A stretch of DNA of 63,350 nucleotides, the filler included, from Octopus bimaculoides (Eukaryota): assembly GCF_001194135.2 (NCBI RefSeq). It is 5 parts of 4 records of this genome, joined end to end, with 100 filler letters (N's around TTAATTAATTAA, not from the genome) between each part and the next. Parts side by side here need not be neighbours in the genome. Positions count along the whole stretch, not along the records: positions 1 to 20,048 come from NC_068987.1; 4 more parts are not named here. One strand, given 5' to 3'. Positions 760 to 19,995 of the stretch are shown piece by piece (position 1 is the stretch's first letter; each line of letters starts with the position of its first letter). The position numbers and the translations under genes are program-made. Below the pieces are notes generated by a model. It was given only the letters and a program-made list of their open reading frames with translations. It searched no databases and had not been told where the DNA came from.

Positions 760-836
760 GTACGGGCGGCAAATTTTTTCCCACTAGAGTTCCAGACCCC
801 AGTAATGAACTCATTTGCATACAGCCAATCAGAGCT
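760..836. repeat. Left arm of inverted repeat flanking the PLA2 cassette (octamer + CCAAT)
   Basis: Reverse complement matches 1816-1890 (57/63 nt in the core by eye). ATTTGCAT at 813-820 and GCCAATC at 824-830. Confidence 0.8.
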
Positions 837-880
837 CATCTCGAAAATCTACATATTGTGTACTACTATAGTACAGCCAG

Positions 881-1201
881 TCAGACATAGATTGTGTTTA
901 GCGAAAATAGCTCCTGCTGATAGTAAACCGATGGGTGGGGGCCTTGTTTGGCAGCGTACTCGATAAATTCTTTGTCCGCTTCCCAAGTATCTTTATGAGG
1001 GTCGGTATAATGGAGGTCATGAACTTTTGCTAGTCTGTCTAGCTCGTTGATGGGATCAGCATCGAGCTTAGATAATATGTGTGTGCCTGCTCCTAGGTAT
1101 TTGTAGCCAGGTGGATGTAATTCGTACGTGTTCTCTTGGACTTTGAGTAATTGTTCTTCTTTATCGTGTGAGGTCCTTTTATCACGTCTGATCGGAGGCA
1201 T
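881..1201 (-). CDS. Parvovirus-VP1u/Polinton(adintovirus)-type phospholipase A2 domain protein (endogenous viral element; C-terminus probably frameshifted)
   Basis: 106-aa ORF containing YELHPPGYKYLGAGT (Ca-binding loop, consensus PGYxYLGPG), INELDRLAKVHDLHY (catalytic HD) and ADKEF. A 1-nt shift near 930-942 would continue it as PIGLLSAGAIFAKHNL, resembling PLA2X C-termini. Confidence 0.85.
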   Translation of the reverse strand: MPPIRRDKRTSHDKEEQLLKVQENTYELHPPGYKYLGAGTHILSKLDADPINELDRLAKVHDLHYTDPHKDTWEADKEFIEYAAKQGPHPSVYYQQELFSLNTIYV

Positions 1202-1213
1202 GGAAAATTCTAA

Positions 1214-1318
1214 AATGACGATGGCAATGGCTACATTGATATTTATATAGTGGCAACTCTTACTTCCAGCGAAAGCACTTTTTCCAAGGCCTCCTCGCCT
1301 ATCCCCCCCGCCCCCACA
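1214..1318 (-). promoter_or_regulatory. Pol II core promoter of the PLA2 ORF (GC box, TATA, Inr)
   Basis: Minus strand has GGGGCGGGG at about 1305-1316, TATATAAATA at 1249-1240 and TCATT at 1218-1214. The putative +1 (1216) lies about 31 nt from TATAAA and 15 nt before the ATG. Confidence 0.55.
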
Positions 1319-1815
1319 GCAATTAAATTTAATTCACCCAGCTGTGAGTACAGCATGACAGGTCTCACATAAGCACCACATTTCCTGCTCCACCATCCTC
1401 ATAGATCCATCGAGTACTATCTCTAAATGGAGCTAACATTAGGTACCTATGCTCAGATTGAGATTAGTGATACTGCATGTATCTATTGATATGTGCAAGG
1501 AAGGTGCAATACGACTCAACGTCATATCGATTACGATGTTTCCAGATCAACACCAACATTTTAAATTAGAAATGTACAAAATCTGCCAAAAAAATTAGGC
1601 AACTACGCTCATTTACATTTTCTAGTAAATTACGCAAATTAGCAAAACTTATGGCATCATCGGTGAGCAGCTCTCCATTCACTTTATAAACTAAATTTCA
1701 CATTTGTCACTCTTATTAACCCGTTTAGAACAGTTGGATTTTGCTATAACGCACACTTTCCACTGAACTTAACCAGAGTATTTTCGTGACTAGGTGGACA
1801 CTAGGTTGATAGTTA

Positions 1816-1890
1816 AGCTCTGATTTGCTGTATGCAAATAAGTTCATAACTGGGATCCGGAACTCTCGTGGGAAAAAAAATTTCGCGTAC
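1816..1890. repeat. Right arm of inverted repeat flanking the PLA2 cassette
   Basis: agctctgatttgctgtatgcaaataagttcataactgggatccggaactctcgtgggaaaaaa; ATGCAAAT at 1832-1839. Confidence 0.8.
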
Positions 1891-2601
1891 GGCAGAAACT
1901 TGAATTGTTTCAAGCCGATATTGCTTTGTATGTATAGGTTTTAAGATACAGAATCAAGTCCTGATTAGTTATTAACTTTATGACGTACGCCATTTGTTTT
2001 TGTCTACCTATAGCTATCTGAGTGGCCGACTGCCGGAGTATGTCATTTGTTTATCAAATGTTCGGGTCACATTTTGTTTCGGCAACAATCCAGTGTTCTG
2101 GCTGCGAGGGGACCTCACTTGTTTGTCAACTCCTTTGATCACTTGTTTTTGTCCAGTGCTCTGGCTGATTGATTTTCTGTGCCCGTCATTTGTCTTACAA
2201 ATGTCTTGATCATTTTTGTCAGTCAAAAGCAAGTGACGTCGTTGATTTAATAACTACTGAGAACTTAAACCCATATCTTAAAACCTACACATACAAAGTA
2301 ATCTCGGCTTAAAACTGTTCAAATTTCATCGTTCCTGTTGACTGATTTCCTTAAAATTTGTCGGCTGAACGTTTCAAAGCACCATTCGTTTCTCTTTTTT
2401 TTCCCCTGGTCGAAATCAGACTTTTAATTCGTCTGCCGAACAGCTAAGGTACAGAGATGCANNNNNNNNNNNNNNNNNNNNNNNNNNNNNNNNNNNNNNN
2501 NNNNNNNNNNNNNNNNNNNNNNNNNNNNNNNNNNNNNNNNNNNNNNNNNNNNNNNNNNNNNNNNNNNNNNNNNNNNNNNNNNNNNNNNNNNNNNNNNNNN
2601 N

Positions 2602-3604: not shown

Positions 3605-5184
3605 CGTGCGTGCGTGTGTGTGTAAGTATGTGTGTATGCTTGTGTGTGTGTATCATAGTTTTTAGCAGCAGTGTGGCCTTCCCCTCAGCCCCATCCTCTC
3701 ACCATGTTGTTACTGCTGCTGTCCTAAGACCCAAAAATTTGGTACAGTTCCTGTTTTCCTCTATGTATGTGTGTTCGCTCATGCTGTTGCCACCGTGGTA
3801 GTTGTTGTTGTTTCTGTTCTTATTGCCATCGCTGTNNNNNNNNNNNNNNNNNNNNNNNNNNNNNNNNNNNNNNNNNNNNNNNNNNNNNNNNNNNNNNNNN
3901 NNNNNNNNNNNNNNNNNNNNNNNNNNNNNNNNNNNNNNNNNNNNNNNNNNNNNNNNNNNNNNNNNNNNNNNNNNNNNNNNNNNNNNNNNNNNNNNNNNNN
4001 NNNNNNNNNNNNNNNNNNNNNNNNNNNNNNNNNNNNNNNNNNNNNNNNNNNNNNNNNNNNNNNNNNNNNNNNNNNNNNNNNNNNNNNNNNNNNNNNNNNN
4101 NNNNNNNNNNNNNNNNNNNNNNNNNNNNNNNNNNNNNNNNNNNNNNNNNNNNNNNNNNNNNNNNNNNNNNNNNNNNNNNNNNNNNNNNNNNNNNNNNNNN
4201 NNNNNNNNNNNNNNNNNNNNNNNNNNNNNNNNNNNNNNNNNNNNNNNNNNNNNNNNNNNNNNNNNNNNNNNNNNNNNNNNNNNNNNNNNNNNNNNNNNNN
4301 NNNNNNNNNNNNNNNNNNNNNNNNNNNNNNNNNNNNNNNNNNNNNNNNNNNNNNNNNNNNNNNNNNNNNNNNNNNNNNNNNNNNNNNNNNNNNNNNNNNN
4401 NNNNNNNNNNNNNNNNNNNNNNNNNNNNNNNNNNNNNNNNNNNNNNNNNNNNNNNNNNNNNNNNNNNNNNNNNNNNNNNNNNNNNNNNNNNNNNNNNNNN
4501 NNNNNNNATATATACATAAGGTAAAATACAAATATCCTGAAGAAGGGGTCTTCATCTCAAAATATATGTATGTGTATATGTGTGTGTGTGTGTGTTCCAT
4601 ATGGATTCGAAAATTGAGTTGTCTCTTTTGACGCATGAGTTATTAAAAGATTCAGTAATCTTTCGGCTACTAAATAAAGTATGTTTTTTGCACAACTCTT
4701 TTTTACTACAAATAACCTCGAAAACGAGGTCGGATCGCACAATTTTGAGGTCTTTAGCAATATGAGAAAATGTTTAAAATATATGAAGTTTTACCAGGGA
4801 ATGAAACTTCGAAGATACACCGTTAGCTTTATTAGTATTATTTAGTAGATAATCTTTTAATATGGAGTATGTTTGTCTGCGTTTTTGTTTAGAACTGGTG
4901 TAGCAGACCCATCGCATAAAAAAAAAAATTTTTCTTCTTGAAATACTGTAAATCTGTGTCTTTCTTCTGACGAAAGGGTGTGTTTTAAGAGAGATTTGAC
5001 TACTATTTGTAATAGCACAAATTACCACAGAGACACCTCTGTATGTGCGCTTTGTTGTGGTGAAAAAAATACTTTTTCTCAAAATATTCTGCACAATAAT
5101 TTTTAAAGAAATCTGGTCTTCTTTTTATTAGGTGCAAGCGAACGTGACCTTGGGGAAGAAGCACAAAGACACACACGCACATGG

Positions 5185-5394: not shown

Positions 5395-6025
5395 TACAGA
5401 TACATGTATTTATATGTATGTCTGTGTATGCATGTGTGTATGTATGTATGTATGTATGCATGTATGTATGCATGTATGTATGTAGGAATGAATGCACTTA
5501 TGTACGTATGTATAAATGTACGTACGTACGTATGTACGTATGTACGAATGTATGTATGTATGTATGTATGTATGCATGCATGCATGTATGTACGCATTAT
5601 GTATGAATGCATTTACATACGTATGTATGAATGTATGTAGGTAAGTTTGTATGTATATATGTATGTACGTATGTATGTATGTATGTATGTATGTATGTAT
5701 GAATGAATGCACTTATGTACATATGTATGAATGTACTACGTACGTATATTTGTATGTATGCACGAATGTATGTATATATGTACGTATGTGTGAGTATGTA
5801 TGTATGCACGAATGTATGCATGTACGAATGTACATATGTATGTGTATGTATGTATGTATGTACGTACGTACGTACGTATGTATGTATGTACGTATGTATG
5901 CACTTAAGTACGTATGTATGAATGTATGTACGTACGTTTGTATGTATGTACGTACGTACGTATGTATGTATGTATGTATGTATGTATGTATGTATGTATG
6001 TATGTATGTATGTATGTATGTATGT
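5395..6025. repeat. Long degenerate (TATG/TACG)n microsatellite
   Basis: About 630 bp of tatg/tacg/catg units. Confidence 0.95.
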
Positions 6026-7014
6026 GAAATTCCACTGAAAGTCTGTTCTATGTAAGTGACATACGAGACTGCAAGAATGCTTTCTATATTTTATTATTTT
6101 ATTCAACTTTGAGCCGTTGTTAGAGGTGAATGGTGTGTGTGGAGCGTTTTGTAATGTGCGGTTGGTGGCTGGAAGGTGACTTTTGATTGGTGAGGAACTA
6201 GGTGTGAGGGTACAACTGCACAGTTTCGAGTGCTAAATACATATTAGATAGGTAGATGGATACTTTAATGCTTTCGCTGCTCCAGAACAGAAAGAGCATT
6301 GCAACCCTCAGGTACCAGCAAAGTTGAAGCTCTTATCACACACATACACACGCACACACACACACGCACATAAACACACACAGAGACACGCACATACGCA
6401 CATACACTCATATACGCACGCACATACTCGCTCATGTCGTCACTTTCCAAACGCGCGCACGTTTTTATCATTTCTACGCTGCCATGTATGTAGAGCCGAG
6501 AAGTGTATCCAGATACATCACGAATTCATGCCCAGACACAAACGAGCATACATACNNNNNNNNNNNNNNNNNNNNNNNNNNNNNNNNNNNNNNNNNNNNN
6601 NNNNNNNNNNNNNNNNNNNNNNNNNNNNNNNNNNNNNNNNNNNNNNNNNNNNNNNNNNNNNNNNNNNNNNNNNNNNNNNNNNNNNNNNNNNNNNNNNNNN
6701 NNNNNNNNNNNNNNNNNNNNNNNNNNNNNNNNNNNNNNNNNNNNNNNNNNNNNNNNNNNNNNNNNNNNNNNNNNNNNNNNNNNNNNNNNNNNNNNNNNNN
6801 NNNNNNNNNNNNNNNNNNNNNNNNNNNNNNNNNNNNNNNNNNNNNNNNNNNNNNNNNNNNNNNNNNNNNNNNNNNNNNNNNNNNNNNNNNNNNNNNNNNN
6901 NNNNNNNNNNNNNNNNNNNNNNNNNNNNNNNNNNNNNNNNNNNNNNNNNNNNNNNNNNNNNNNNNNNNNNNNNNNNNNNNNNNNNNNNNNNNNNNNNNNN
7001 NNNNNNNNNNNNNN

Positions 7015-7256: not shown

Positions 7257-7993
7257 AAGAGGTCTGAACAATAAGTATCCGGACTGTTGCTATAGTAACA
7301 AAGCTAAAGCACTTAGGGTGAAGCCGCTTGGTAAAAATTGACCTTGAATTCTGCACACTAAGTTTTAACGTACTAACACACTTCTACTGTTTACAGCATT
7401 GCTTGGTAGGAAGGTGTGTAGCGTGTAATCGTTGCATTGACCATAACAGAAAGTTGTCATGGCGATACCAGCTCAGAGCCCTACACAAAGTTGCAGAAAG
7501 CGTATGGAGTGGAGTGCATGAGCCTCACAGAAGTGTACGAGTGCTTCAGACGTTTCCAAGATGGCCGAAAAAATGTCGACATTGAGGAACGTTCTGGGAG
7601 ACCCGCACCCAGAAGATCTGAGAAAAATATCGCAAATGTACGTACACGTGTGAGGGAAAATCGCCGAATCACTATCCGTGAGTTATCAGAGGATGTGCAG
7701 ATTAGTTACGATTCAGTTCATCCATTATCACTGAAGATTTGGGTATGAGACGCGCGTCTGCCAAGTTTATGCCAAAACTGCTTTCAGATGACCAAGAAGG
7801 TGCTCAGGTTTCAGTTGCTCAAGAGTTCTTTGATTGTGTCGAGAAGTATGAAAATATTTTGAAAACTTTGTATAGGCCGCTGAGCAGGTCAATCTGTGTC
7901 AATCTGTGTCAATCTGTGTCAAGCGGCTTCACTCTGCGTGCTACAGTTTCGTTACTATGGCAACAGTCCGGATACTTGTTGATCAGACTACAT
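7257..7993 (+). mobile_element. Internally deleted mariner-type transposon
   Basis: About 40-bp TIRs (ggtctgaacaataagtatccggactgttgctatagtaac / gttactatggcaacagtccggatacttgttgatcagac) in TA context. Transposase N-terminal HTH remnants: VYECFRRFQDGRKNVDIEERSGRP, NRRITIRELSEDVQIS, MRRASAKFMPKLLS. Confidence 0.9.
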
Positions 7994-8053
7994 ATATAAT
8001 TCAAGGTGTATTCCGTTAATAGAGCTCGTTCGCCCTTAGAATTACCAAATGTC

Positions 8054-8128: not shown

Positions 8129-9352
8129 CATAGACATGACAGAAGTAAATAGACAACCCTATAATCATTAAGATGTATTTAAATTTTAAATTATACATAC
8201 AAATTATTTATTAATAATTATAATGTGAATATTTGATATTCAGTAGACATGCTCTTTATATTTTCCAATGCAAGGACCCTATTAGGCATGTTACTGATCA
8301 GATGCCGAATATTCTCTTGCGGAATTTCTTGCCAAGTTTCATGCAGTAATCTCAAAAGATCTGGCTTTGAAGATGCTGTCCTGTCCATTATGTCCCAGAG
8401 ATGTTCAATAGGGTTCGTATCTGGTGACTGACTTGGCCATGGAAGCTTTTTAATGCCATTCTCATCCAACAAATCTTGGGTCATTTTAGCCGTGTGTCAA
8501 GGAGCCCCATCTTCCATAAAGAGTCTTCTTTAATCATTTCACCACCGGAGAAGATTGTAAGGAGCCCTTTCTGCAATATGGACGCATATTTATCTAACTT
8601 TATGTTTCTCTTACTCGCCACCAGCTCTGATCAACCATTGCTCCAAATTGCTCCCCAGTCCATCACAGAATAGCTGCCGTATTTCATTGTTGGCTGCAAT
8701 CTTTTCACATCAAATTCTTGATGGTAGAGTCTCCAGACCCACACTCGACCACTGCCAGGAAATACAGCAAATTTGAACTCATCAGAGAATATGACAGTCC
8801 CAATGCTAGTGGCCTCTTCACCATCTCACTGGCCCAATCTTTTCTCCGCTTGATGTTGGCTGGTCGAAGAAATGGTTTCCTTCTTCTTGTTCTGCCATAG
8901 TAACCAAGTTTGTGGAGATACCTGACAGCTGTTGTGAGACTGACATCAACTTGCTCTGCTATGTCAGAGGTCTTGCAATGAGGATTATCCTCCACACTTC
9001 TTTTAGCAAAGAGAAGTGTCCTGCCATAGGGCTCTGGTTGATCTGGGCAAGGTGATGTGAACTCCTTCTCCTCTCATGTGAATTGCACAATTACTCTATT
9101 AACTGTAGAAAGTGGGATCCCAAGGTCTTCTGCGATTGTACGCTATGTCCACCTTCAGAATAACCCACAATACAGCCTCTTTGAAATTCAGACAGTTCCA
9201 AGCCTTCTTTTGTACATGACATGATTAAACAGTCATATATAGAACCTGAAGCATAAAAATGTCAATTAATAAAAAAATATATACCTTTACAAGTTAGAAT
9301 AAACGTATAACGATGTTTTATGGGGTGTCTATTTACTTCTGTTATGTCTTTG
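8129..9352 (-). mobile_element. Tc1-family transposon (decayed, 1224 bp)
   Basis: TIRs catagacatgacagaagtaaatagacaaccc / ggggtgtctatttacttctgttatgtctttg with TA flanks. Frameshifted transposase: YLHKLGYYGRTRRRKPFLRPANIKRRKDWA and LPWPSQSPDTNPIEHLWDIMDR. Confidence 0.92.
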
Positions 9353-9360
9353 TATGTATG

Positions 9361-9776
9361 TCATTATTCAGTTTATTTCAAGATTTCTTGAAAGAACCGG
9401 TTTCTAATCTAGATTCAAGGTTCCTTCAGTGGAATTTCAACATTAACAGCGGGGTATTTTTGTATGTATGTATGTATGTATGTATGTATGTATGTATGTA
9501 TGTGCAGATTTGTATGTCTTATATATGTATTCTCATGCATATAATTGCATATTTAGACATGCTCATATATATTTAAATGATAAACCTCTGGAAATGTTTA
9601 CAGATATTTACAGTTCCAGTGATGGACTAAATCTGTAATCTTCGAATTAGCTTTCTCCTTTCTAGTTTTGAGACGCCTAATTTCTCAAGACTGGTATTTA
9701 GGCAGTGCGCTATATACCCCAGTGCCCCAATAATTGTAGGTATAAACCTGAATTTGTAATCTGGATAGAGTAACTG
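9361..9776 (-). mobile_element. 5'-truncated R4/Dong-like RLE non-LTR retrotransposon, copy 1
   Basis: QLLYPDYKFRFIPTIIGALGYIAHCLNTSLEKLG...LQI then a 3'UTR with an internal (CATA)n and AATAAA. Flanked on both sides by (TATG)n. Confidence 0.8.
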
Positions 9777-9826
9777 TATGCATGTATGTATGTATGTATG
9801 TATTATGTACGTACGGACGTATTTAC

Positions 9827-9857
<31 letters not shown>

Positions 9858-10223
9858 TGTATATGTATGCATGTATATGAATTCATTCCCTAAAAAAGAA
9901 CAAACCAAGCAAATCCGGGTTCTCCGAATAGAAAATCTTTAGAAATAACTTTTCAAAGTGGTTTAATCGCACTGCTAACGCATGTGGAGCGTAGTTATCA
10001 AGCCTTTGATATTCTTGGCAGTGTATTATGGCAGCAAAACGAAATACTGTAGCCCTGTCAGCAATTAATTACAAATTCTATCAATCAGTCTTTTACAGTT
10101 AAAATGTGTAAAACGTTCAGGAAATTCCGTATATGAGTTTACCATGCTAAACATGAAAAACGTAATATGCCCGATGGACTCGCTCCATGTGAATTTTCTG
10201 TGCACGGACCCATTGCATATAGA

Positions 10224-10275
<52 letters not shown>

Positions 10276-10490
10276 CTGCATACTAAAGTCGAATACATAT
10301 CCACCACACAAATACAAGTTATCCATCAGCAGAAACATGCGTATAAACACACTTCAATCGATTCAGACGACCAAAAGTACTCATAACTGAAACATAAGAG
10401 ACTAGCCAGCTTGAATAAATCTTTAGCATAAAGAACACTTACATACATGCATACATACATACATACATGCATACATACATACATACATAC

Positions 10491-10971: not shown

Positions 10972-11206
10972 TCAAGTTTTGGCACATGGTCAAAAATTTC
11001 GGGGGAAGGGTTAAATGGGTAACATCGACCCCAGCTGAGATTTATTTTATCGACCCCAGTGTTCAACTGGTACTTACTTCATCGACTCCGAAGGATGAAA
11101 GGCAAAGTCGACCTCGGTGGAATTTGAATTCAGAACGTTAGAGACGAGAGATATACCGCTAAGCATTTCACCCGACGTTTTAACAATTCAGCTAGCTCAC
11201 CGCCTT
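10972..11206 (-). mobile_element. SINE family C (tRNA head + MetaSINE-like central domain)
   Basis: Reverse complement of ggcggtgagctagctgaattgtta...ttctgaattcaaattccaccgaggtcgactttgcctttcatccttcggagtcgatgaagtaagtaccag; more than 10 copies in the window. Confidence 0.75.
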
Positions 11207-11259
11207 ACGGCTGACGGTAACAATGGCCAAAATCTTAGTCATCAAAGTATGTATGTATG

Positions 11260-11787
11260 TCATTCAGTTTTATTTCAAGATTTCTTGCCAACAGAGAAAG
11301 AATCGGTTTCTAACTTAGATCCAAAGCTCCTTTATTGGAATTGCAACATCAACAGTGTATGTATGTATGTATGTATGTATGTATGTATGTATGTATGTAT
11401 GTATGTATGTATGTATGCATGTATGTATGTATGTATGCATGTATGTATGTATGTATGTATGTATGTATGTATATATATATGTATGTATGCTGTGTTCTAT
11501 GTATGTATTCTCATGCATATAATTGCATATCTAGACATGCTCATATATACTTAAATGATAAACTTCTGGAAAGTTTTACATATTTTTACAGTTCCAGTGA
11601 TGACTTGGATTTGTAGTCTTCGAATCAGCTTTCTCCTTTCTGGTTTTGAGAAGCCTAATTTATCAAGATTAGTATTTAGGCAGTGTATTATAAATCCCAG
11701 TGCCCCAATAATTACAGGTATAAACCTGAACTTGTAATCGGTATAGAGTAGCTGTAGATTCCTCAGTAGGTTCAGAGTAGGTACTTT
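11260..11787 (-). mobile_element. 5'-truncated R4/Dong-like RLE retrotransposon, copy 2
   Basis: Colinear with 9361-9776 (LLRNLQLLYR.YKFRFIPVIIGALG...; same 3'UTR). (TATG)n at 11248-11259 and 11788-11811. Confidence 0.8.
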
Positions 11788-13153
11788 TATGTATGTATGT
11801 ATGTATGTATGTTTTCATGCATGTAATAGTTTCATATTAAGTGCATACATTGCACAGCGCAAACGGTTACCTGCAACTATCCTCTCGTCAGGTGAAGAGA
11901 AGTCGCTAGTGAATCGTTTTGAAATTTGAGACGAAGAGCTTCGATTGTTAGGAATGTGGAGGGATGTGTCGTTTTCCTTTTTTGGAATTGTGTAAGTGGC
12001 TAAGTCGTTGATGTACGATGAAATTACCTGACTGTTTACACCAGTGTTTCCTAACTTATTTTCCCCCAGGCCCCCACTATAACTTTCCAGAAAAATGTAT
12101 GCCCCACCGGCGGATGGAAAAAAAATATAGGCTCAACAAGGAGATCTAGGATTAACCATAAAACAAGATGGATGGATGATATCCATATCTCTGTTGGTTA
12201 CGTTCTGGAATCCAGCCGGAAAATCTAATGACATTTGTTTCTGATAGGACTCTATGGAGGAGGTACCTGAGGACTCTACTCGCACGATCCTCCCAAAAAC
12301 GGTAGACGAAGAGGATGGATGGATGGCGGGAAGGATGGATCGAGGGAGAGAGGGAGAGAGGGAGGAAGGGGTGGATGGATGGATAGATGAAGTATTAAAA
12401 AATGTAGCGAAACCATTATTAAAAAATAAGATTTGCAGAAGACTGAGTCTTCAGTGACGTTTATACCATATTGTAAGTATAATATAAACGAAATACTGCG
12501 TGTAATTGAAAGGTATCTATTGTCTCAGCTAGGTAGAAAGGTAGGCGGAGAAAGTTACTTTTGTCGTTATTGTTGTTTAACCCTAGGTCGACCGTATTTG
12601 AGTAGATCAATGTTTATGATCAAAGATATTCCAGCTAGCTCCTAACTGTTTAGAAACAAAACTACATTATCCAGTGTATCTTCCATTAGAAAAGATAGTA
12701 GTGAATGATATAATGGAGATTTGGGCTGCTATTTCTAGTAAGTCAAGCAACTATGTTCAGGCTACTTCATTGGCTCAGAGCAGAGTAAGAGTCAAAGCAA
12801 AATTGGGTATCGAAACCACAAATTCAAAGATGAGCAGTGGTAGGTGTTATTACTATTATACAGCGTTGGTGCAGAGAAAATCCAACTAATCGATAAAAAC
12901 CTGTGACCTTCACCCTACAACAAAAAGTGGAACGCTCTTGTCTCGCCTAGGAAATTTGATGTATGTTATTGTTACGATGGTGTATCCCCGCATCAGCTTT
13001 GATTGAACCTTCCAGGCGTGACTCAAGAACATGTTGCTTTTGCTTAGTTTAGAGGCCTCATGCATACTCCGACTTGAAATGGTTGCTCGTAAGGAGAACA
13101 GTGTGAAACAGTCAAGACATGTTGTATTCTGAGAGGTAACATTTATCTCCACT

Positions 13154-13366
13154 AAGGTAACGAGCAGGCAGAATCGTTAATACGCCAAGTGAGATGCTTA
13201 ACATCACTTCGTCCGTCTTCATGTTCTGAGTTCAAATTCCACCGAAGTCGACTTTTCTTTTTATCATTTCGGGGTCGATAAAATAAGTACCAGGTGAGTA
13301 CTGGGGTCGTGTAATCGACTTACGTGCTGCCCTGAAATTGCTGGCCTTGTGCCAAAATTTGAAATC
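13154..13366 (+). mobile_element. SINE family C
   Basis: ggcagaatcgttaatacgcc...gttctgagttcaaattccaccgaagtcgac...tttcggggtcgataaaataagtaccagg...tggccttgtgccaaaatttgaaa. Confidence 0.8.
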
Positions 13367-13744: not shown

Positions 13745-14144
13745 ATGGAGGCGCAATGGCCCAGTGGTTAGGGCAACGGACTCGCGGTCATAAGATCGCG
13801 GTTTCGATTCCCAGACCGGCCGTTGTGAGTGTTTATTGAGCGAAAACACCTAAAAGCTCCACGAGGATCCAGCAGGAGATGGTGGCGAACCCCTGCTGTA
13901 CTCTTTCACCACAACTTTCTCTCACTCTTACTTCCTGTTTCTGTTGTGCCTGCAATTCAAAGGGTCAGCCATGTCACACTGTGTCACGCTGAATATCCCC
14001 GAGAACTACGTTAAAGGTACACGTGTCTGTGGAGTGCTCAGCCACTTGCACGTTAATTTCACGAGCAGGCTGTTCCGTTGATCGGATCAACTGGAACCCT
14101 CGACGTTGTAAGCGACGGAGTGCCAGCCAGCCAGCCAGCCAGCC
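13745..14144 (+). mobile_element. SINE family B (tRNA-derived), full length with 13-bp TSD
   Basis: A box tggcccagtgg, B box ggtttcgattccc, (CCAG)n tail. TSD actttctggtcgt at 13732-13744 and 14145-14157. Confidence 0.9.
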
Positions 14145-15039: not shown

Positions 15040-15450
15040 TTCAAAATGCCATGCACTTTGAATTAAAGACCCGGTGAGGTTAACTTCGTCTTTCATTCTT
15101 TCGGGGTCGATTAATAAAGTACCAGTCCCGTACAAGAGTCGATTTCTCTTTTTCTTTAGATTGTACATGTTCTTTAAAGTCTTGTCACGTCGTGCATACA
15201 GAGTACAGATGTTTGAGGAATCCTCAGCCACTAATACGCTAATCTCACGAGTAGGAAAAGTACAGGATGATAGAATCGTTAGCATGCCGGTCAAAAGCTT
15301 AGTCACATTTCTTACGGCTTTACATTTTTAGTTCAAATTCCGTCGAGGTTGGCTTTACCTTTCATCCTCTCGGGGTCAATAAAATAAGTACCCATTGAGC
15401 ACTGAGATTGATCTAATTAATTAGCCCCAGCTCCTAAAATTTCAGGCTTT
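15040..15450 (+). mobile_element. Two degenerate SINE family C copies
   Basis: cattctttcggggtcgattaataaagtaccag (about 15093-15124) and ttagttcaaattccgtcgaggttggctttacctttcatcctctcggggtcaataaaataagtacc (about 15329-15391). Confidence 0.6.
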
Positions 15451-18419: not shown

Positions 18420-19618
18420 ACTTAATACGGTGGTTTCCTATTTAGGTACAAGGCAAACAATTTTGAAAGGATGGAATAGTCGAAATTAAAACCAACACCG
18501 AAAAGATGAAAGGCAAAGTTGACCTCGGTACGATTTGAGATCAGAACGTAAAGAGTCAGAACAAATACTGCAAAGCAATTGTTCCAATGCCTTGACGAAT
18601 CTACCAGCCTCACCCCCACCTATGGTTTCACATTCTGGCATAAGGCCAGCAAGTTGGTGGGATTGGGGGAGAGATTAATAGATTACACCGACCCCAGTGC
18701 TCAACTAGTTTTTATATTATCAACTCCATAAGGATGAAAAGCAAAGTCGACCTCGGTGGAATTTGATCCCAGTTGGCAAAGCAGAAAGAAATGCCTTTAA
18801 GCAGTTTGTCCGGCGCAGTAACGATTCTACCAGCTCGCCGCTCCTTCTACTTTACATAATCCTGTTTTATTTTGGCACAAGGACAGCAGTTTTGAGGGAA
18901 GCGGTATGTTGATTACTTCGGTCTCTAAGGTTCAGCCGGTACATATTTTATCGAGCCCGAAAAAATGAAAGGCAAAGTCAACATCTGCAGATTTAAACTC
19001 TGAAAGTGAAAAGTCGGAAGAATTTTTGATAAATTTTCAGATTAACACCCGCACGATTTTCACTAGGGTGTTAGGGTTAGAGTTTTAGGGTTAGGATTAG
19101 GGTTAGGGTTACGGACGGAATTTCCTAACCCTAACCTTAAAACCCTAACCCTAACCCTAAAACCCTAACCCTGACTCTAAAACCTTAACCGTAACACCCT
19201 AGTGAAAATCGTGCGGGTGTTAATCTGAAAATTTACCGAATTTTTGTTCGACGCGCTAACAACACAGTCAGCAGCCTCCCTCTACTTTATAAAATGGTTT
19301 CAAATTTTGGCACAAGGCCAGCAAGTTTGCGGGAAGGGGTAAGTCGATTTCATCGACCCTAATGTTCAATTGGTTCATATTTTATCGGCTCCGAAAGAAT
19401 GAAAAGCAAAATCGACCTCGGCGAATTTTGAACTCAGAACGCGAAGAGGATAAATCGATTACATTGGTCCCTAGTGTTCAACTGATACTTATTTAATCGG
19501 CCCCAAAAGGATGAAAGACAAAGTCAACCTCGACGGAATTTGAACTCTGAAAGTAAAAAATCGGAAGAAATGCCAAACAGCATTTTGTTCGACGCACTAA
19601 CGATTCTACTACCTCGCC
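18420..19618 (-). mobile_element. Cluster of about 5 same-orientation SINE family C copies
   Basis: Repeated gatgaaaggcaaagtcgacctcgg...tttgaactc module at about 18505, 18733, 18965, 19400 and 19510. Confidence 0.75.
19028..19237. mobile_element. 210-bp foldback MITE with inverted telomeric (TTAGGG)n/(CCCTAA)n arms
   Basis: Perfect 44-bp TIR (19030-19073 / 19192-19235). TSD gaattttt(g) at 19020-19027 and 19238-19245. It interrupts a SINE C copy. Confidence 0.88.
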
Positions 19619-19995
19619 GCATTCATCTACTTATTATAATAAAAGCAAAAAAGATGCATCATTCGTTGGCGAACTTGCCAAACCACAAGTGAAAATTGCA
19701 GTTCAGCCATACTTTACCAAAATAACTGACAACGTCGTCACACCTAACACAAATTTGCCCCACAAAACACGACAAACAGGATTTTCTCAGCACGTGTGTA
19801 CAATCCCAGCTTTATCATTGGCTGCCTTTGTTTAGTATTGTCGCTGATTGGTAGACGAGCAGAAAAACTAATTTTTTGGTTAACATAGGTATAAGCATAT
19901 TACATACATACATACATACATACACACACATACATACATACATACATACATACATACACATATGCATACATTCACATGCAATAATCCACACGCTC

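What the first reader, a model, noticed from the sequence alone, without database searches (positions are those of the whole stretch)
849..1201. Endogenous viral PLA2 domain (Polinton/adintovirus- or densovirus-like) with intact catalytic motifs
Seen: ELHPPGYKYLGAGT...PINELDRLAKVHDLHY...ADKEF in one open frame. Shifting frame at the G-run (about 930-942) gives IGLLSAGAIFAKHNL, ending at a stop at 849-851. Established: this sPLA2-like domain is the endosome-escape module of parvovirus VP1u and also occurs in Polinton/adintovirus (PLA2X) proteins. Inference: the ELH...GT context and the C-terminus favour a Polinton/adintovirus origin, and a stand-alone ATG-initiated ORF fits PLA2X better than a capsid N-terminus. 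It is the only clear non-transposase, non-RT protein in the window.
Basis: partly seen in the sequence, partly recalled or inferred. Interest (0 to 1): 0.75.

Follow-up and report, generated by a model that had tools for sequence, protein, structure and literature searches.

The report
Broken parvovirus capsid fragment in octopus
This is a short, broken leftover of the front end of a parvovirus-type capsid gene (its phospholipase A2 domain) in an octopus-like genome; such viral fossils are a known kind, and it did not come from a Polinton/adintovirus.

Summary
A 106-codon ATG-initiated ORF at 881-1201 (minus strand) matches the viral PLA2 family PF08398 above Pfam's cut-off (E 2e-8). It keeps the calcium loop, the His-Asp dyad and the distal Asp. 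The domain's last helix continues in a second frame that ends at the stop at 849-851.

The favoured origin, Polinton/adintovirus PLA2X, is not supported. The nearest relatives (52-55% identity) are N-termini of parvovirus-like VP1 proteins. Two come from Octopus vulgaris and O. bimaculoides. Their loci carry a capsid body and a Parvo_NS1 gene. Several start with the same first residues as this ORF, so the ATG is the VP1 start codon.

Verified Polinton-borne PLA2 proteins score lower. None of their neighbouring genes is in the window. No pX-like domain is present.

The window's copy has one frameshift, lacks the capsid body and has no NS1 nearby. It sits in non-coding DNA of an octopod scaffold. 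It is most likely an inert endogenous parvoviral fragment: a new member of a known kind, of low to moderate interest.

Two things stay open. A 68-nt inverted repeat brackets the fragment. The related loci all place VP upstream of NS1 on one strand.

The parts
849..1201 (-). Relic of the 5' end of a parvovirus-like VP1 gene (the VP1 unique region with its PLA2 domain). It is a broken gene with 1 frameshift, no in-frame stop in the retained part, and a 3' truncation: the capsid body is missing.
   Evidence: ORF listing. Pfam PF08398 at E 2e-8. phmmer best E 2.5e-15. Collinear second-frame match to P0001, P0002 and P0016. No capsid-body or NS1 similarity anywhere else in 1-20048.
959..1123 (-). 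PLA2-like domain core as matched by the Pfam profile (ORF residues 27-81). It holds the Y-x-G-x-G loop, the His-Asp dyad with Tyr, and the distal Asp.
   Evidence: profile positions 2-60 of 80. (conserved columns). (alignment to dependoparvovirus VP1 residues about 39-83).
1242..1249 (-). TATA-like box (TATATAAA) that starts 48 nt upstream of the ATG. It may be a leftover of the viral VP promoter. This is inferred, not shown.
   Evidence: Read directly. TATA-like motifs lie 25-70 nt upstream of the VP1 ATG in L001, L002, L006 and L008. The upstream alignments are not better than shuffles.
774..841 (.). Left arm of a 68-nt inverted repeat that begins 8 nt beyond the end of the viral remnant. 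Its origin is unresolved.
   Evidence: arms 88% complementary, 969 nt apart. (63 nt at 90%). (the 21-nt core occurs only at these two places in the window, 0 expected by chance).
1811..1878 (.). Right arm of the same inverted repeat, about 610 nt upstream of the ATG.
   Evidence: No copy in IMG/VR or in any fetched locus.

Best explanation
Window 849-1201 (minus strand) is an endogenous parvoviral element: a roughly 350-nt leftover of the 5' end of a VP1 capsid gene from a densovirus-like parvovirus lineage that has entered octopod genomes more than once. In the virus, this N-terminal region carries a secreted-type PLA2 domain that is exposed during entry and breaches the endosomal membrane (established knowledge for Parvoviridae VP1u). 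In the host genome the copy has lost everything downstream of the PLA2 domain and carries one frameshift inside it. It has no replication gene nearby. It is therefore most likely an inert relic, at most transcribed.

Shown: the domain identity, the parvovirus-type relatives and their gene neighbourhoods, the breaks, and the octopod host.

Inferred: germline integration of a fragment (or of a genome later deleted), loss of function, and that the TATA box upstream is the old VP promoter.
For: - Domain: PF08398 above the gathering score. All 123 exhaustive-search hits carry it.
- Nearest relatives are VP1 N-termini. P0001 (55% identity over 62 aa, 81 bits) lies on L008 with a capsid body and an NS1 fragment downstream. 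P0016 is in Octopus vulgaris chromosome record OX597831.1, followed by capsid body and an NS1 N-terminal fragment. P0008 is from O. bimaculoides. P0004 carries the densovirus AdSDV_VP1 domain. P0007 sits directly behind a 408-aa Parvo_NS1 gene. P0020 lies on a 4.9-kb contig with a 472-aa Parvo_NS1, E 1.7e-19.
- A profile of these relatives hits solved parvovirus VP1 chains at E 1.8e-15, and the alignment runs into the capsid body.
- A neighbour-joining tree of the domain puts the window in a 7-leaf clade with P0001, P0002, P0004, P0008, P0016 and P0057. That clade sits inside a 22-leaf clade holding all the context-verified parvovirus-type sequences.
- Fold-search hits in BFVD are all but one (an entomopoxvirus PLA2-like protein at rank 10) Parvoviridae VP1/capsid proteins among those that carry a name.
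- The N-terminus is collinear with the Octopus copies from residue 1.
- The window lacks capsid body and NS1, and the flanks are non-coding in all frames.
- Host: a 380-nt stretch is 91.6% identical to the O. vulgaris locus, and about seven copies of a ~165-nt interspersed repeat are shared with it.
Against: - The PLA2 core alone separates parvovirus-type from Polinton-type proteins only modestly: 64-81 bits against 52-62 bits.
- Bootstrap support on the 70-column domain is weak. The window falls near context-verified parvovirus-type sequences in 56 of 100 replicates and near Polinton-type ones in 3.
- Integration is not proven by a read-level junction. The gap-free stretch that holds the fragment (1-2461) has only one weak match to octopod DNA (100-157, 80% over 61 nt). 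The clearly octopod repeats lie beyond an N gap.
- The ORF still has its ATG, a TATA-like box, no stop in 106 codons and 10 of 11 conserved residues. Recent insertion or some retained use is therefore not excluded.
- The inverted repeat that brackets it is unexplained.
Confidence: 0.8

Rival explanations
1. It comes from a Polinton/adintovirus PLA2X gene: a stand-alone virion accessory gene of a large dsDNA element.
For: Adintoviruses encode PLA2-like genes (PMC8502044). Polinton-borne PLA2 proteins were recovered by the search: P0012/P0135 on L010 with rve, Pox_A32 and a DJR-like gene, and P0127 on L009 with rve. They are 46-57% identical to the window's PLA2 core.
Against: They score lower than the parvovirus-type relatives, and none matches the second-frame piece. 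PLA2X is defined by a C-terminal pX-like domain, which is absent here and in the nearest relatives. In P0012 the PLA2 lies at the C-terminus, behind a 300-residue DUF8207 region. Here it starts about 27 residues after a Met that is shared with VP1 relatives. No other Polinton gene matches the window. The tree places the window with the parvovirus-type sequences.
Confidence: 0.06
2. The fragment has been co-opted: a small viral-type PLA2 (or PLA2-like peptide) is expressed by the octopod from the retained TATA box and ATG.
For: The ATG is intact, 106 codons run without a stop, a TATA-like box lies 48 nt upstream, and catalytic residues are kept. Uninterrupted PLA2-bearing ORFs are annotated in O. 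vulgaris and O. bimaculoides.
Against: One frameshift cuts off the last conserved helix of the domain. No identical or near-identical protein is on record among 5.8 billion clusters or 153 billion gene positions. There is no signal peptide-like start and no polyadenylation signal directly after the stop. The AlphaFold model is only moderately confident, with mean pLDDT 62 and the tail below 50.
Confidence: 0.07
3. The viral piece is cargo of, or inserted into, a host mobile or foldback element. The 68-nt inverted repeats at 774-841 and 1811-1878 would be that element's arms, and the copy reached this site by transposition rather than by direct viral integration.
For: The arms bracket the fragment closely on the 3' side, 8 nt from its end, and are far beyond chance. 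A second foldback, 1895-2327 (z -8.8), lies next to the right arm. In the O. vulgaris locus the viral pieces are likewise flanked by host repeat copies in opposite orientation.
Against: No further copy of the arms was found in the window, in 20.8 kb of O. vulgaris, in the relatives' loci or in IMG/VR. No target-site duplication is visible next to the arms. No eukaryotic genome collection was available to count copies.
Confidence: 0.15
4. It is an exon of a cellular secreted PLA2 gene.
For: There are weak phmmer hits to snake-venom PLA2 chains (E 0.07-2). Seven of the 123 relatives also touch PF05826.
Against: The ORF has no cysteine at all, whereas cellular secreted PLA2s are disulphide-rich (established knowledge). 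The only Pfam family above threshold is the viral-type PF08398. No splice-compatible coding sequence lies in the flanks.
Confidence: 0.01
5. It is not integrated: reads from an exogenous virus or a contaminant were scaffolded into the assembly.
For: The fragment-bearing stretch is separated from the clearly octopod part of the window by an N gap at 2462-2601.
Against: About 850 nt on one side and 1250 nt on the other are contiguous with it, AT-rich and non-coding. They show no similarity to the relatives' virus-like contigs. The gene is broken and truncated, unlike the uninterrupted ORFs of L002. A weak octopod repeat match lies at 100-157.
Confidence: 0.03

Closest known systems
PLA2 domain of the parvovirus VP1 unique region (Pfam PF08398, formerly Parvo_coat_N)
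   Same: Same profile family above threshold. Same loop, His-Asp-Tyr and distal Asp residues. Same position about 30 residues from the VP1 start.
   Different: Only the domain survives here. One frameshift lies inside it, and no capsid body or NS1 follows. One highly conserved loop residue is Ala instead of the majority residue.
Endogenous parvovirus-like copies in Octopus vulgaris (P0016, record OX597831.1 at about 6.79 Mb) and O. bimaculoides (P0008)
   Same: Same host group. Same N-terminal start, collinear from residue 1. Same domain.
   Different: Identity is only 32-40% at the protein level and about 64% at the DNA level within the domain, so these are different insertions or lineages, not orthologues. 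The O. vulgaris locus keeps a capsid body and an NS1 fragment.
Parvovirus-related sequences and endogenous densovirus-like elements reported across invertebrates, including molluscs (Francois et al. 2016, PMC5013282)
   Same: Same kind of object: fragmentary NS1- or VP-derived sequence in an invertebrate genome, with the PLA2 motif as the most conserved VP part.
   Different: That paper does not name an octopus or any cephalopod (0 occurrences). Two full-text searches found no paper on octopus endogenous parvoviral or densoviral elements.
Adintovirus/Polinton PLA2X (Starrett et al. 2021, PMC8502044)
   Same: A homologous PLA2-like domain, 46-57% identical in the core to verified Polinton-borne examples.
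   Different: No pX-like C-terminal domain, no Polinton neighbours, lower scores, and a different domain position.
Acheta domesticus segmented densovirus VP1 family (Pfam PF25662), through relative P0004 from Nymphon striatum
   Same: P0004 is among the four best hits (45% identity over 73 aa, 67 bits) and joins the window's clade.
   Different: The PF25662 capsid part has no counterpart in the window.

Membership tests
Parvoviridae VP1u PLA2 domain (PF08398) | Profile match above the curated gathering score | tested here: met
   34.8 bits against a cut-off of 23.9, E 2e-8, residues 27-81
Parvoviridae VP1u PLA2 domain (PF08398) | Calcium-binding loop Y-x-G-x-G | tested here: met
   Y35-L-G37-A-G39 in the ORF. 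Both Gly columns are at least 90% conserved among 123 sequences. Position 38 is Ala instead of the majority residue.
Parvoviridae VP1u PLA2 domain (PF08398) | Catalytic His-Asp dyad with following Tyr, and the distal Asp | tested here: met
   H61, D62, Y65 and D76 are all present in columns conserved at 90% or more
Parvoviridae VP1u PLA2 domain (PF08398) | Sits at the N-terminus of a capsid protein with a jelly-roll body downstream | tested here: not met
   No capsid-body similarity in 1-848 or elsewhere in the window. The feature is met in relatives P0016/L001, L002, L006, L008, P0004, P0022 and P0030. The window copy is truncated.
Parvoviridae VP1u PLA2 domain (PF08398) | Linked NS1 (SF3 helicase, PF01057) gene in the same element | tested here: not met
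   No NS1 in the window; the best tblastn E is 0.026, which is not significant. The feature is met at the relatives' loci L001, L002, L006, L007 and L008.
Parvoviridae VP1u PLA2 domain (PF08398) | Phospholipase activity | not testable with these tools
   Sequence and a moderate-confidence model only (pLDDT 62)
Adintovirus/Polinton PLA2X | C-terminal adenovirus pX-like domain (as defined in PMC8502044) | tested here: not met
   No PF05829 hit in the ORF or in the nearest relatives. Caveat: the window copy is truncated.
Adintovirus/Polinton PLA2X | Neighbouring Polinton genes (pPolB, rve integrase, packaging ATPase, double-jelly-roll capsid) | tested here: not met
   tblastn with all genes of two verified Polinton-type contigs hits only the PLA2. 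The other ORFs of the window are Tc1/mariner relics.
Adintovirus/Polinton PLA2X | Closest homologues are Polinton-borne | tested here: not met
   Polinton-borne P0012 and P0127 score 52-62 bits against 64-81 bits for NS1-linked or VP-bodied relatives. Tree.
Cellular secreted PLA2 | Cysteine-rich disulphide scaffold and a cellular PLA2 profile | tested here: not met
   0 Cys in 106 residues. No cellular PLA2 family in the Pfam scan at E<=10.
Endogenous viral element | Virus-derived sequence contiguous with host DNA | tested here: met
   The fragment is contiguous with about 850 and 1250 nt of non-coding, non-viral DNA. The scaffold carries octopod repeats, one at 91.6% over 380 nt. Caveat: an N gap at 2462-2601 lies between the fragment and those repeats.
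Endogenous viral element | Degraded relative to the viral gene | tested here: met
   1 frameshift, 3' truncation and no partner genes
Endogenous viral element | Vertically inherited (orthologous copies in related species or fixed in the population) | not testable with these tools
   No eukaryotic genome collection was searchable. The exact-protein look-up found nothing.

The most novel reading that the evidence does not exclude
The fragment is one of several octopod germline copies of an undescribed cephalopod-associated parvovirus lineage. In that lineage the capsid gene, with its own TATA promoter, lies upstream of NS1 on the same strand. To my knowledge this gene order occurs in no classified parvovirus: monosense genera run NS then VP, and ambisense densoviruses use opposite strands. 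The order VP1(PLA2), capsid body, NS1 is seen in four divergent loci: L001 from O. vulgaris, L002/L003, L006 and L008. L003 shows 1278 nt upstream of VP1 without any NS1 3' end, which argues against a head-to-tail tandem. The window itself cannot show the order; it only belongs to that clade, with weak bootstrap support.
Probability: 0.3. Interest if true: 0.55.

Novelty: new member of a known kind. Interest (0 to 1): 0.25.

Why it matters
As a single locus it matters little. It adds an octopod example to the long list of endogenous parvoviral fragments. It also corrects an attribution: a viral PLA2 domain on its own does not indicate a Polinton. Its wider value is as a pointer. Octopus genomes hold several mutually divergent VP1u-bearing copies, and the better-preserved relatives outline a parvovirus-like lineage with no named close relative in the searches run here and an unusual gene order. 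A descriptive survey of cephalopod assemblies could document that lineage.

Tried and rejected
- The word-indexed protein search with the ORF alone found nothing. The exact-protein look-up found nothing.
- PHROGs gave no hit.
- The Rfam gathering scan and tRNA scan of the whole piece gave nothing, so there is no evidence for a tRNA-derived SINE at the arms.
- DNA comparison of the flanks and inverted-repeat arms with all fetched loci showed similarity only inside the PLA2 domain. An exact-pattern scan of IMG/VR for the arm core gave 0 hits.
- IMG/VR relatives of the protein are distant (27-44% identity), mostly on contigs of about 3.3 kb, and were not pursued.
- A test for a conserved viral promoter or leader upstream of the ATG found local alignments no better than shuffles (p 0.013 to 0.80). 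Only the presence of a TATA-like box is shared.
- A search for a terminal hairpin upstream or downstream of the fragment found none. The bacterial-type promoter/terminator scan is uninformative here.
- The weak NS1-like tblastn hit at 12977-13189 (E 0.026) was rejected. The ORF there has no Pfam match.
- The PDB fold search with the model gave nothing usable. The BFVD hits have weak E-values (best 6e-3) because the model is only moderately confident.
- The NS1 of L002 searched for named relatives returned only unnamed assemblies. The SRA run numbers of the related contigs are not mentioned in any searchable paper, so their host species stay unknown.

Full report
**1. The observation**

It is the only ORF of 90 codons or more in the piece that is not microsatellite translation, N-run or transposon relic.

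Against Pfam it matches PF08398, the 'Phospholipase A2-like domain' of parvovirus coat proteins. The match is E 2e-8 and 34.8 bits against a curated cut-off of 23.9, over residues 27-81, which is nt 959-1123.

An exhaustive phmmer search of 1.84 billion cluster representatives returned 123 proteins at E<=1e-3, the best at 2.5e-15. Every one carries PF08398. Eleven columns are at least 90% conserved in that set. The window has the majority residue at ten of them: both loop glycines, His61, Asp62, Tyr65, Asp76 and others. It has Ala at the eleventh, position 38. So 'intact catalytic motifs' is fair.

The reading frame that ends at the stop at 849-851 contains a 16-19-residue stretch that is 58-75% identical to what follows the PLA2 core in the three nearest relatives. 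It lies collinear with the first piece and in one particular frame. I count one frameshift and no in-frame stop in the retained part. After the second piece all similarity ends.

**2. What the relatives are**

The best hits are short proteins with the PLA2 at their very N-terminus.

| Relative | Similarity to the window ORF | Source or context |
|---|---|---|
| P0001 | 55% over 62 aa, 81 bits | Contig L008, with capsid body and NS1 fragment downstream |
| P0002 | 54%, 76 bits | Short Logan contig |
| P0004 | 45% over 73 aa, 67 bits | Nymphon striatum; carries PF25662, 'Densovirus VP1 protein' |
| P0007 | 52%, 64 bits | Directly behind a 408-residue Parvo_NS1 gene |
| P0008 | collinear from residue 1 | Octopus bimaculoides |
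| P0016 | collinear from residue 1 | Hypothetical protein on Octopus vulgaris chromosome record OX597831.1 |

The similarity figures come, the sources.

Among the 11 relatives aligned, five begin with the same three residues as the window's ORF and three share its first four. The window's ATG is therefore the start codon of this protein family, not a secondary start of a free-standing gene.

**3. Genomic context of the relatives**

Five loci show parvoviral neighbours.

- P0020 lies on a 4.9-kb assembly contig (L002). It is followed on the same strand by a 354-residue ORF and a 472-residue ORF that matches Parvo_NS1 at E 1.7e-19.
- L006 is a 72%-identical relative of that contig with the same layout.
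- P0001's contig L008 has the PLA2 ORF, then sequence similar to the 354-residue ORF (E 3e-40), then an NS1 fragment (E 4e-22).
- At the O. vulgaris locus L001 the PLA2 (10046-10288) is followed by capsid-body similarity up to 11740 (E 2e-39) and an NS1 N-terminal fragment at 12489-12647 (E 7e-8).
- P0007 sits directly behind a 408-residue Parvo_NS1 gene. Its 72-kb contig also carries a HECT-domain gene, so it is a eukaryotic host contig.

A profile of the relatives hits solved parvovirus VP1 chains at E 1.8e-15, with the alignment continuing into the capsid body. A moderate-confidence AlphaFold model of the window's ORF (pLDDT 62) finds, among BFVD matches that carry a name, all but one Parvoviridae VP1/capsid proteins. 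The exception is an entomopoxvirus PLA2-like protein, and the E-values are weak.

**4. Test of the Polinton/adintovirus reading**

Starrett et al. define PLA2X as a PLA2-like domain plus a C-terminal adenovirus pX-like domain (PMC8502044). Two proteins from the same search are Polinton-borne and served as controls.

- P0135/P0012 (410 aa) has the PLA2 at the C-terminus, behind a DUF8207 region. Its contig L010 also carries an rve integrase, a Pox_A32 ATPase and a DJR-like gene.
- P0127 (312 aa) has a faint pX signal. It lies on L009 next to an rve integrase.

They align to the window's PLA2 core at 46-57% identity but score only 52-62 bits, and they have no match to the second-frame piece. None of their other genes matches anything in the window. 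No pX domain is found in the ORF or in its nearest relatives.

A neighbour-joining tree of 136 domain sequences places the window in a 7-leaf clade with P0001, P0002, P0004, P0008, P0016 and P0057. That clade sits inside a 22-leaf clade holding all the context-verified parvovirus-type sequences. Bootstrap support is weak, as expected for 70 columns: 56 of 100 replicates put the window near parvovirus-type sequences and 3 put it near Polinton-type ones. The balance is clear but not overwhelming from the domain alone. The N-terminal collinearity and the gene neighbourhoods carry most of the weight.

A cellular secreted PLA2 is excluded. The ORF has no cysteine and no cellular PLA2 profile match.

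**5. What is left in the window**

tblastn with the capsid-body and NS1 ORFs of the relatives finds nothing in 1-20048 apart from the PLA2 piece. The 848 nt downstream and the DNA upstream are stop-riddled in all frames. Nucleotide similarity to the relatives (59-64%) is confined to the domain. Supported viral sequence therefore spans about 849-1201.

A TATATAAA box starts 48 nt upstream of the ATG. The relatives also have TATA-like motifs 25-70 nt upstream of their VP1 ATG. The upstream alignments are no better than shuffles, so a retained promoter is only an inference.

**6. Host**

The window shares a 380-nt stretch at 91.6% identity with the O. vulgaris locus, and about seven copies of a ~165-nt interspersed repeat at 75-82%. 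The host is therefore an octopod. The fragment-bearing stretch (1-2461) is separated from those repeats by an N gap. It has only one weak octopod match of its own. Read-level confirmation of the junctions would be welcome.

**7. Mechanism**

In the virus, the VP1 unique region is tucked inside the capsid and is exposed in the endosome. Its PLA2 activity then lets the particle escape. This is established knowledge for Parvoviridae. The Pfam family, the conserved residues and the PDB alignments tie this sequence to that module.

In the octopod genome the piece is cut off from the capsid body, is frameshifted within the domain, and has no replication gene. The most likely present state is an inert endogenous viral fragment. 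I put about 0.8 on 'parvovirus-type VP1u relic, non-functional'. Co-option, Polinton origin and contamination each stay below 0.1.

How the fragment got its present shape is not shown. It may have integrated as a subgenomic piece, or a longer insertion may have been deleted later.

**8. Unexplained structure around it**

A 68-nt inverted repeat, 88% complementary and extendable with indels by about 14 nt outward, brackets the fragment at 774-841 and 1811-1878. The left arm starts 8 nt beyond the end of the viral remnant. Its 21-nt core occurs nowhere else in the window, with 0 expected by chance. It is absent from IMG/VR and from every fetched locus.

Immediately beyond the right arm lies a 433-nt foldback at 1895-2327. 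It has arms of about 111 nt at 77% and three ~72-nt direct repeats in the loop. Folded as DNA it gives -74 kcal/mol and z -8.8.

In the O. vulgaris locus a similar-looking inverted repeat around the NS1 fragment turned out to be copies of a host repeat that is also present elsewhere in that locus. The simplest reading here is likewise host repeats or a foldback element into which, or next to which, the viral DNA landed. Without the host genome this could not be tested.

**9. Comparison with what is known, and novelty**

Parvovirus-derived sequences in invertebrate genomes and transcriptomes, molluscs included, have been described (PMC5013282). That paper and a review of aquatic parvoviruses do not mention cephalopods. 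Two full-text searches found no paper on octopus endogenous parvoviral or densoviral elements.

The object is thus a new member of a known kind.

The more interesting by-product concerns the better-preserved relatives. They show VP1, capsid body and NS1 in that order on one strand in four divergent loci, with no sign of a head-to-tail tandem. The P0007 lineage has the canonical NS1-then-VP order. The NS1 of L002 has no named close relative in the protein collection.

The near-complete virus-like contig L002 was handled only gene by gene, by reference. An early notebook entry holds a short degenerate motif pattern copied from an alignment. It is flagged in the notebook and not used here.

Noticed in passing
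window 774-841 and 1811-1878: A 68-nt inverted repeat (88% complementary) brackets the viral fragment. Its core is unique in the window and absent from IMG/VR and from all fetched loci. No target-site duplication was seen. Its origin (host repeat, foldback element or transposon arms) is unresolved.
   Followed up: partly
window 1895-2327: A 433-nt foldback with arms of about 111 nt (77%) and three ~72-nt direct repeats (2042-2217) in the loop. The single-strand DNA fold gives z -8.8. It looks like a MITE or foldback element and directly abuts the right arm of the inverted repeat.
   Followed up: partly
L001 10001-12650; L002 533-4338; L006 254-3416; L008 228-2655: All four related parvovirus-like loci have VP1(PLA2), capsid body and NS1 in that order on one strand, with VP upstream. 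To my knowledge this order is not used by classified parvoviruses. L003 shows 1278 nt upstream of VP1 without an NS1 end, which argues against a tandem array. L007 has the canonical NS1-then-VP order.
   Followed up: partly
L001 9508-9830, 11817-12042, 12954-13264 and 1568-2173: In the O. vulgaris locus the viral pieces are interleaved with copies of one host repeat in both orientations. This creates an inverted repeat around the NS1 fragment, a possible analogue of the arms in the window.
   Followed up: partly
window 13746-14123; also 11049-11210, 13163-13322, 15272-15417, 18500-18580, 18670-18841, 19340-19447, 19451-19620: Interspersed repeats shared with Octopus vulgaris: one 380-nt stretch at 91.6% identity and about seven copies of a ~165-nt SINE-like unit at 75-82%. 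They identify the host as an octopod.
   Followed up: partly
window 7437-7999 (+) and 8218-8995 (-): Decayed Tc1/mariner transposase relics. One is Mos1-type (HTH_48/HTH_32). The other is Tc1-type (HTH_Tnp_Tc3_2 at E 1.5e-10, plus a DDE_3 fragment).
   Followed up: partly
window 19124-19195: An interstitial telomere-like array, 3.6 copies of a 20-nt unit built from CCCTAA repeats.
   Followed up: no
window 5413-6025, 9461-9503, 9775-9876, 11356-11508, 19901-19971: Long (TATG/TGTA)n tetranucleotide arrays, the largest with 155 copies, plus CA/GT and CT dinucleotide runs. They produce the long spurious ORFs in the listing. N gaps lie at 2462-2601, 3836-4507 and 6556-7014.
   Followed up: no
L009 and L010: Polinton/adintovirus-type contigs with PLA2 genes. 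L010 has DUF8207 plus a C-terminal PLA2, next to rve integrase, Pox_A32 ATPase and a DJR-like gene. L009 has a PLA2 with a faint pX signal next to rve. They were used as controls.
   Followed up: partly
L002 316-372: A 57-nt imperfect palindrome (about 85%) lies 160-215 nt upstream of the VP1 ATG of the virus-like contig. It may be part of a terminal hairpin. No counterpart exists in the window.
   Followed up: no
L011-L028 (IMG/VR): Eighteen viral contigs, mostly about 3.3 kb, encode distant PLA2 relatives (27-44% identity). Their size suggests small parvo-like or hybrid ssDNA genomes.
   Followed up: no
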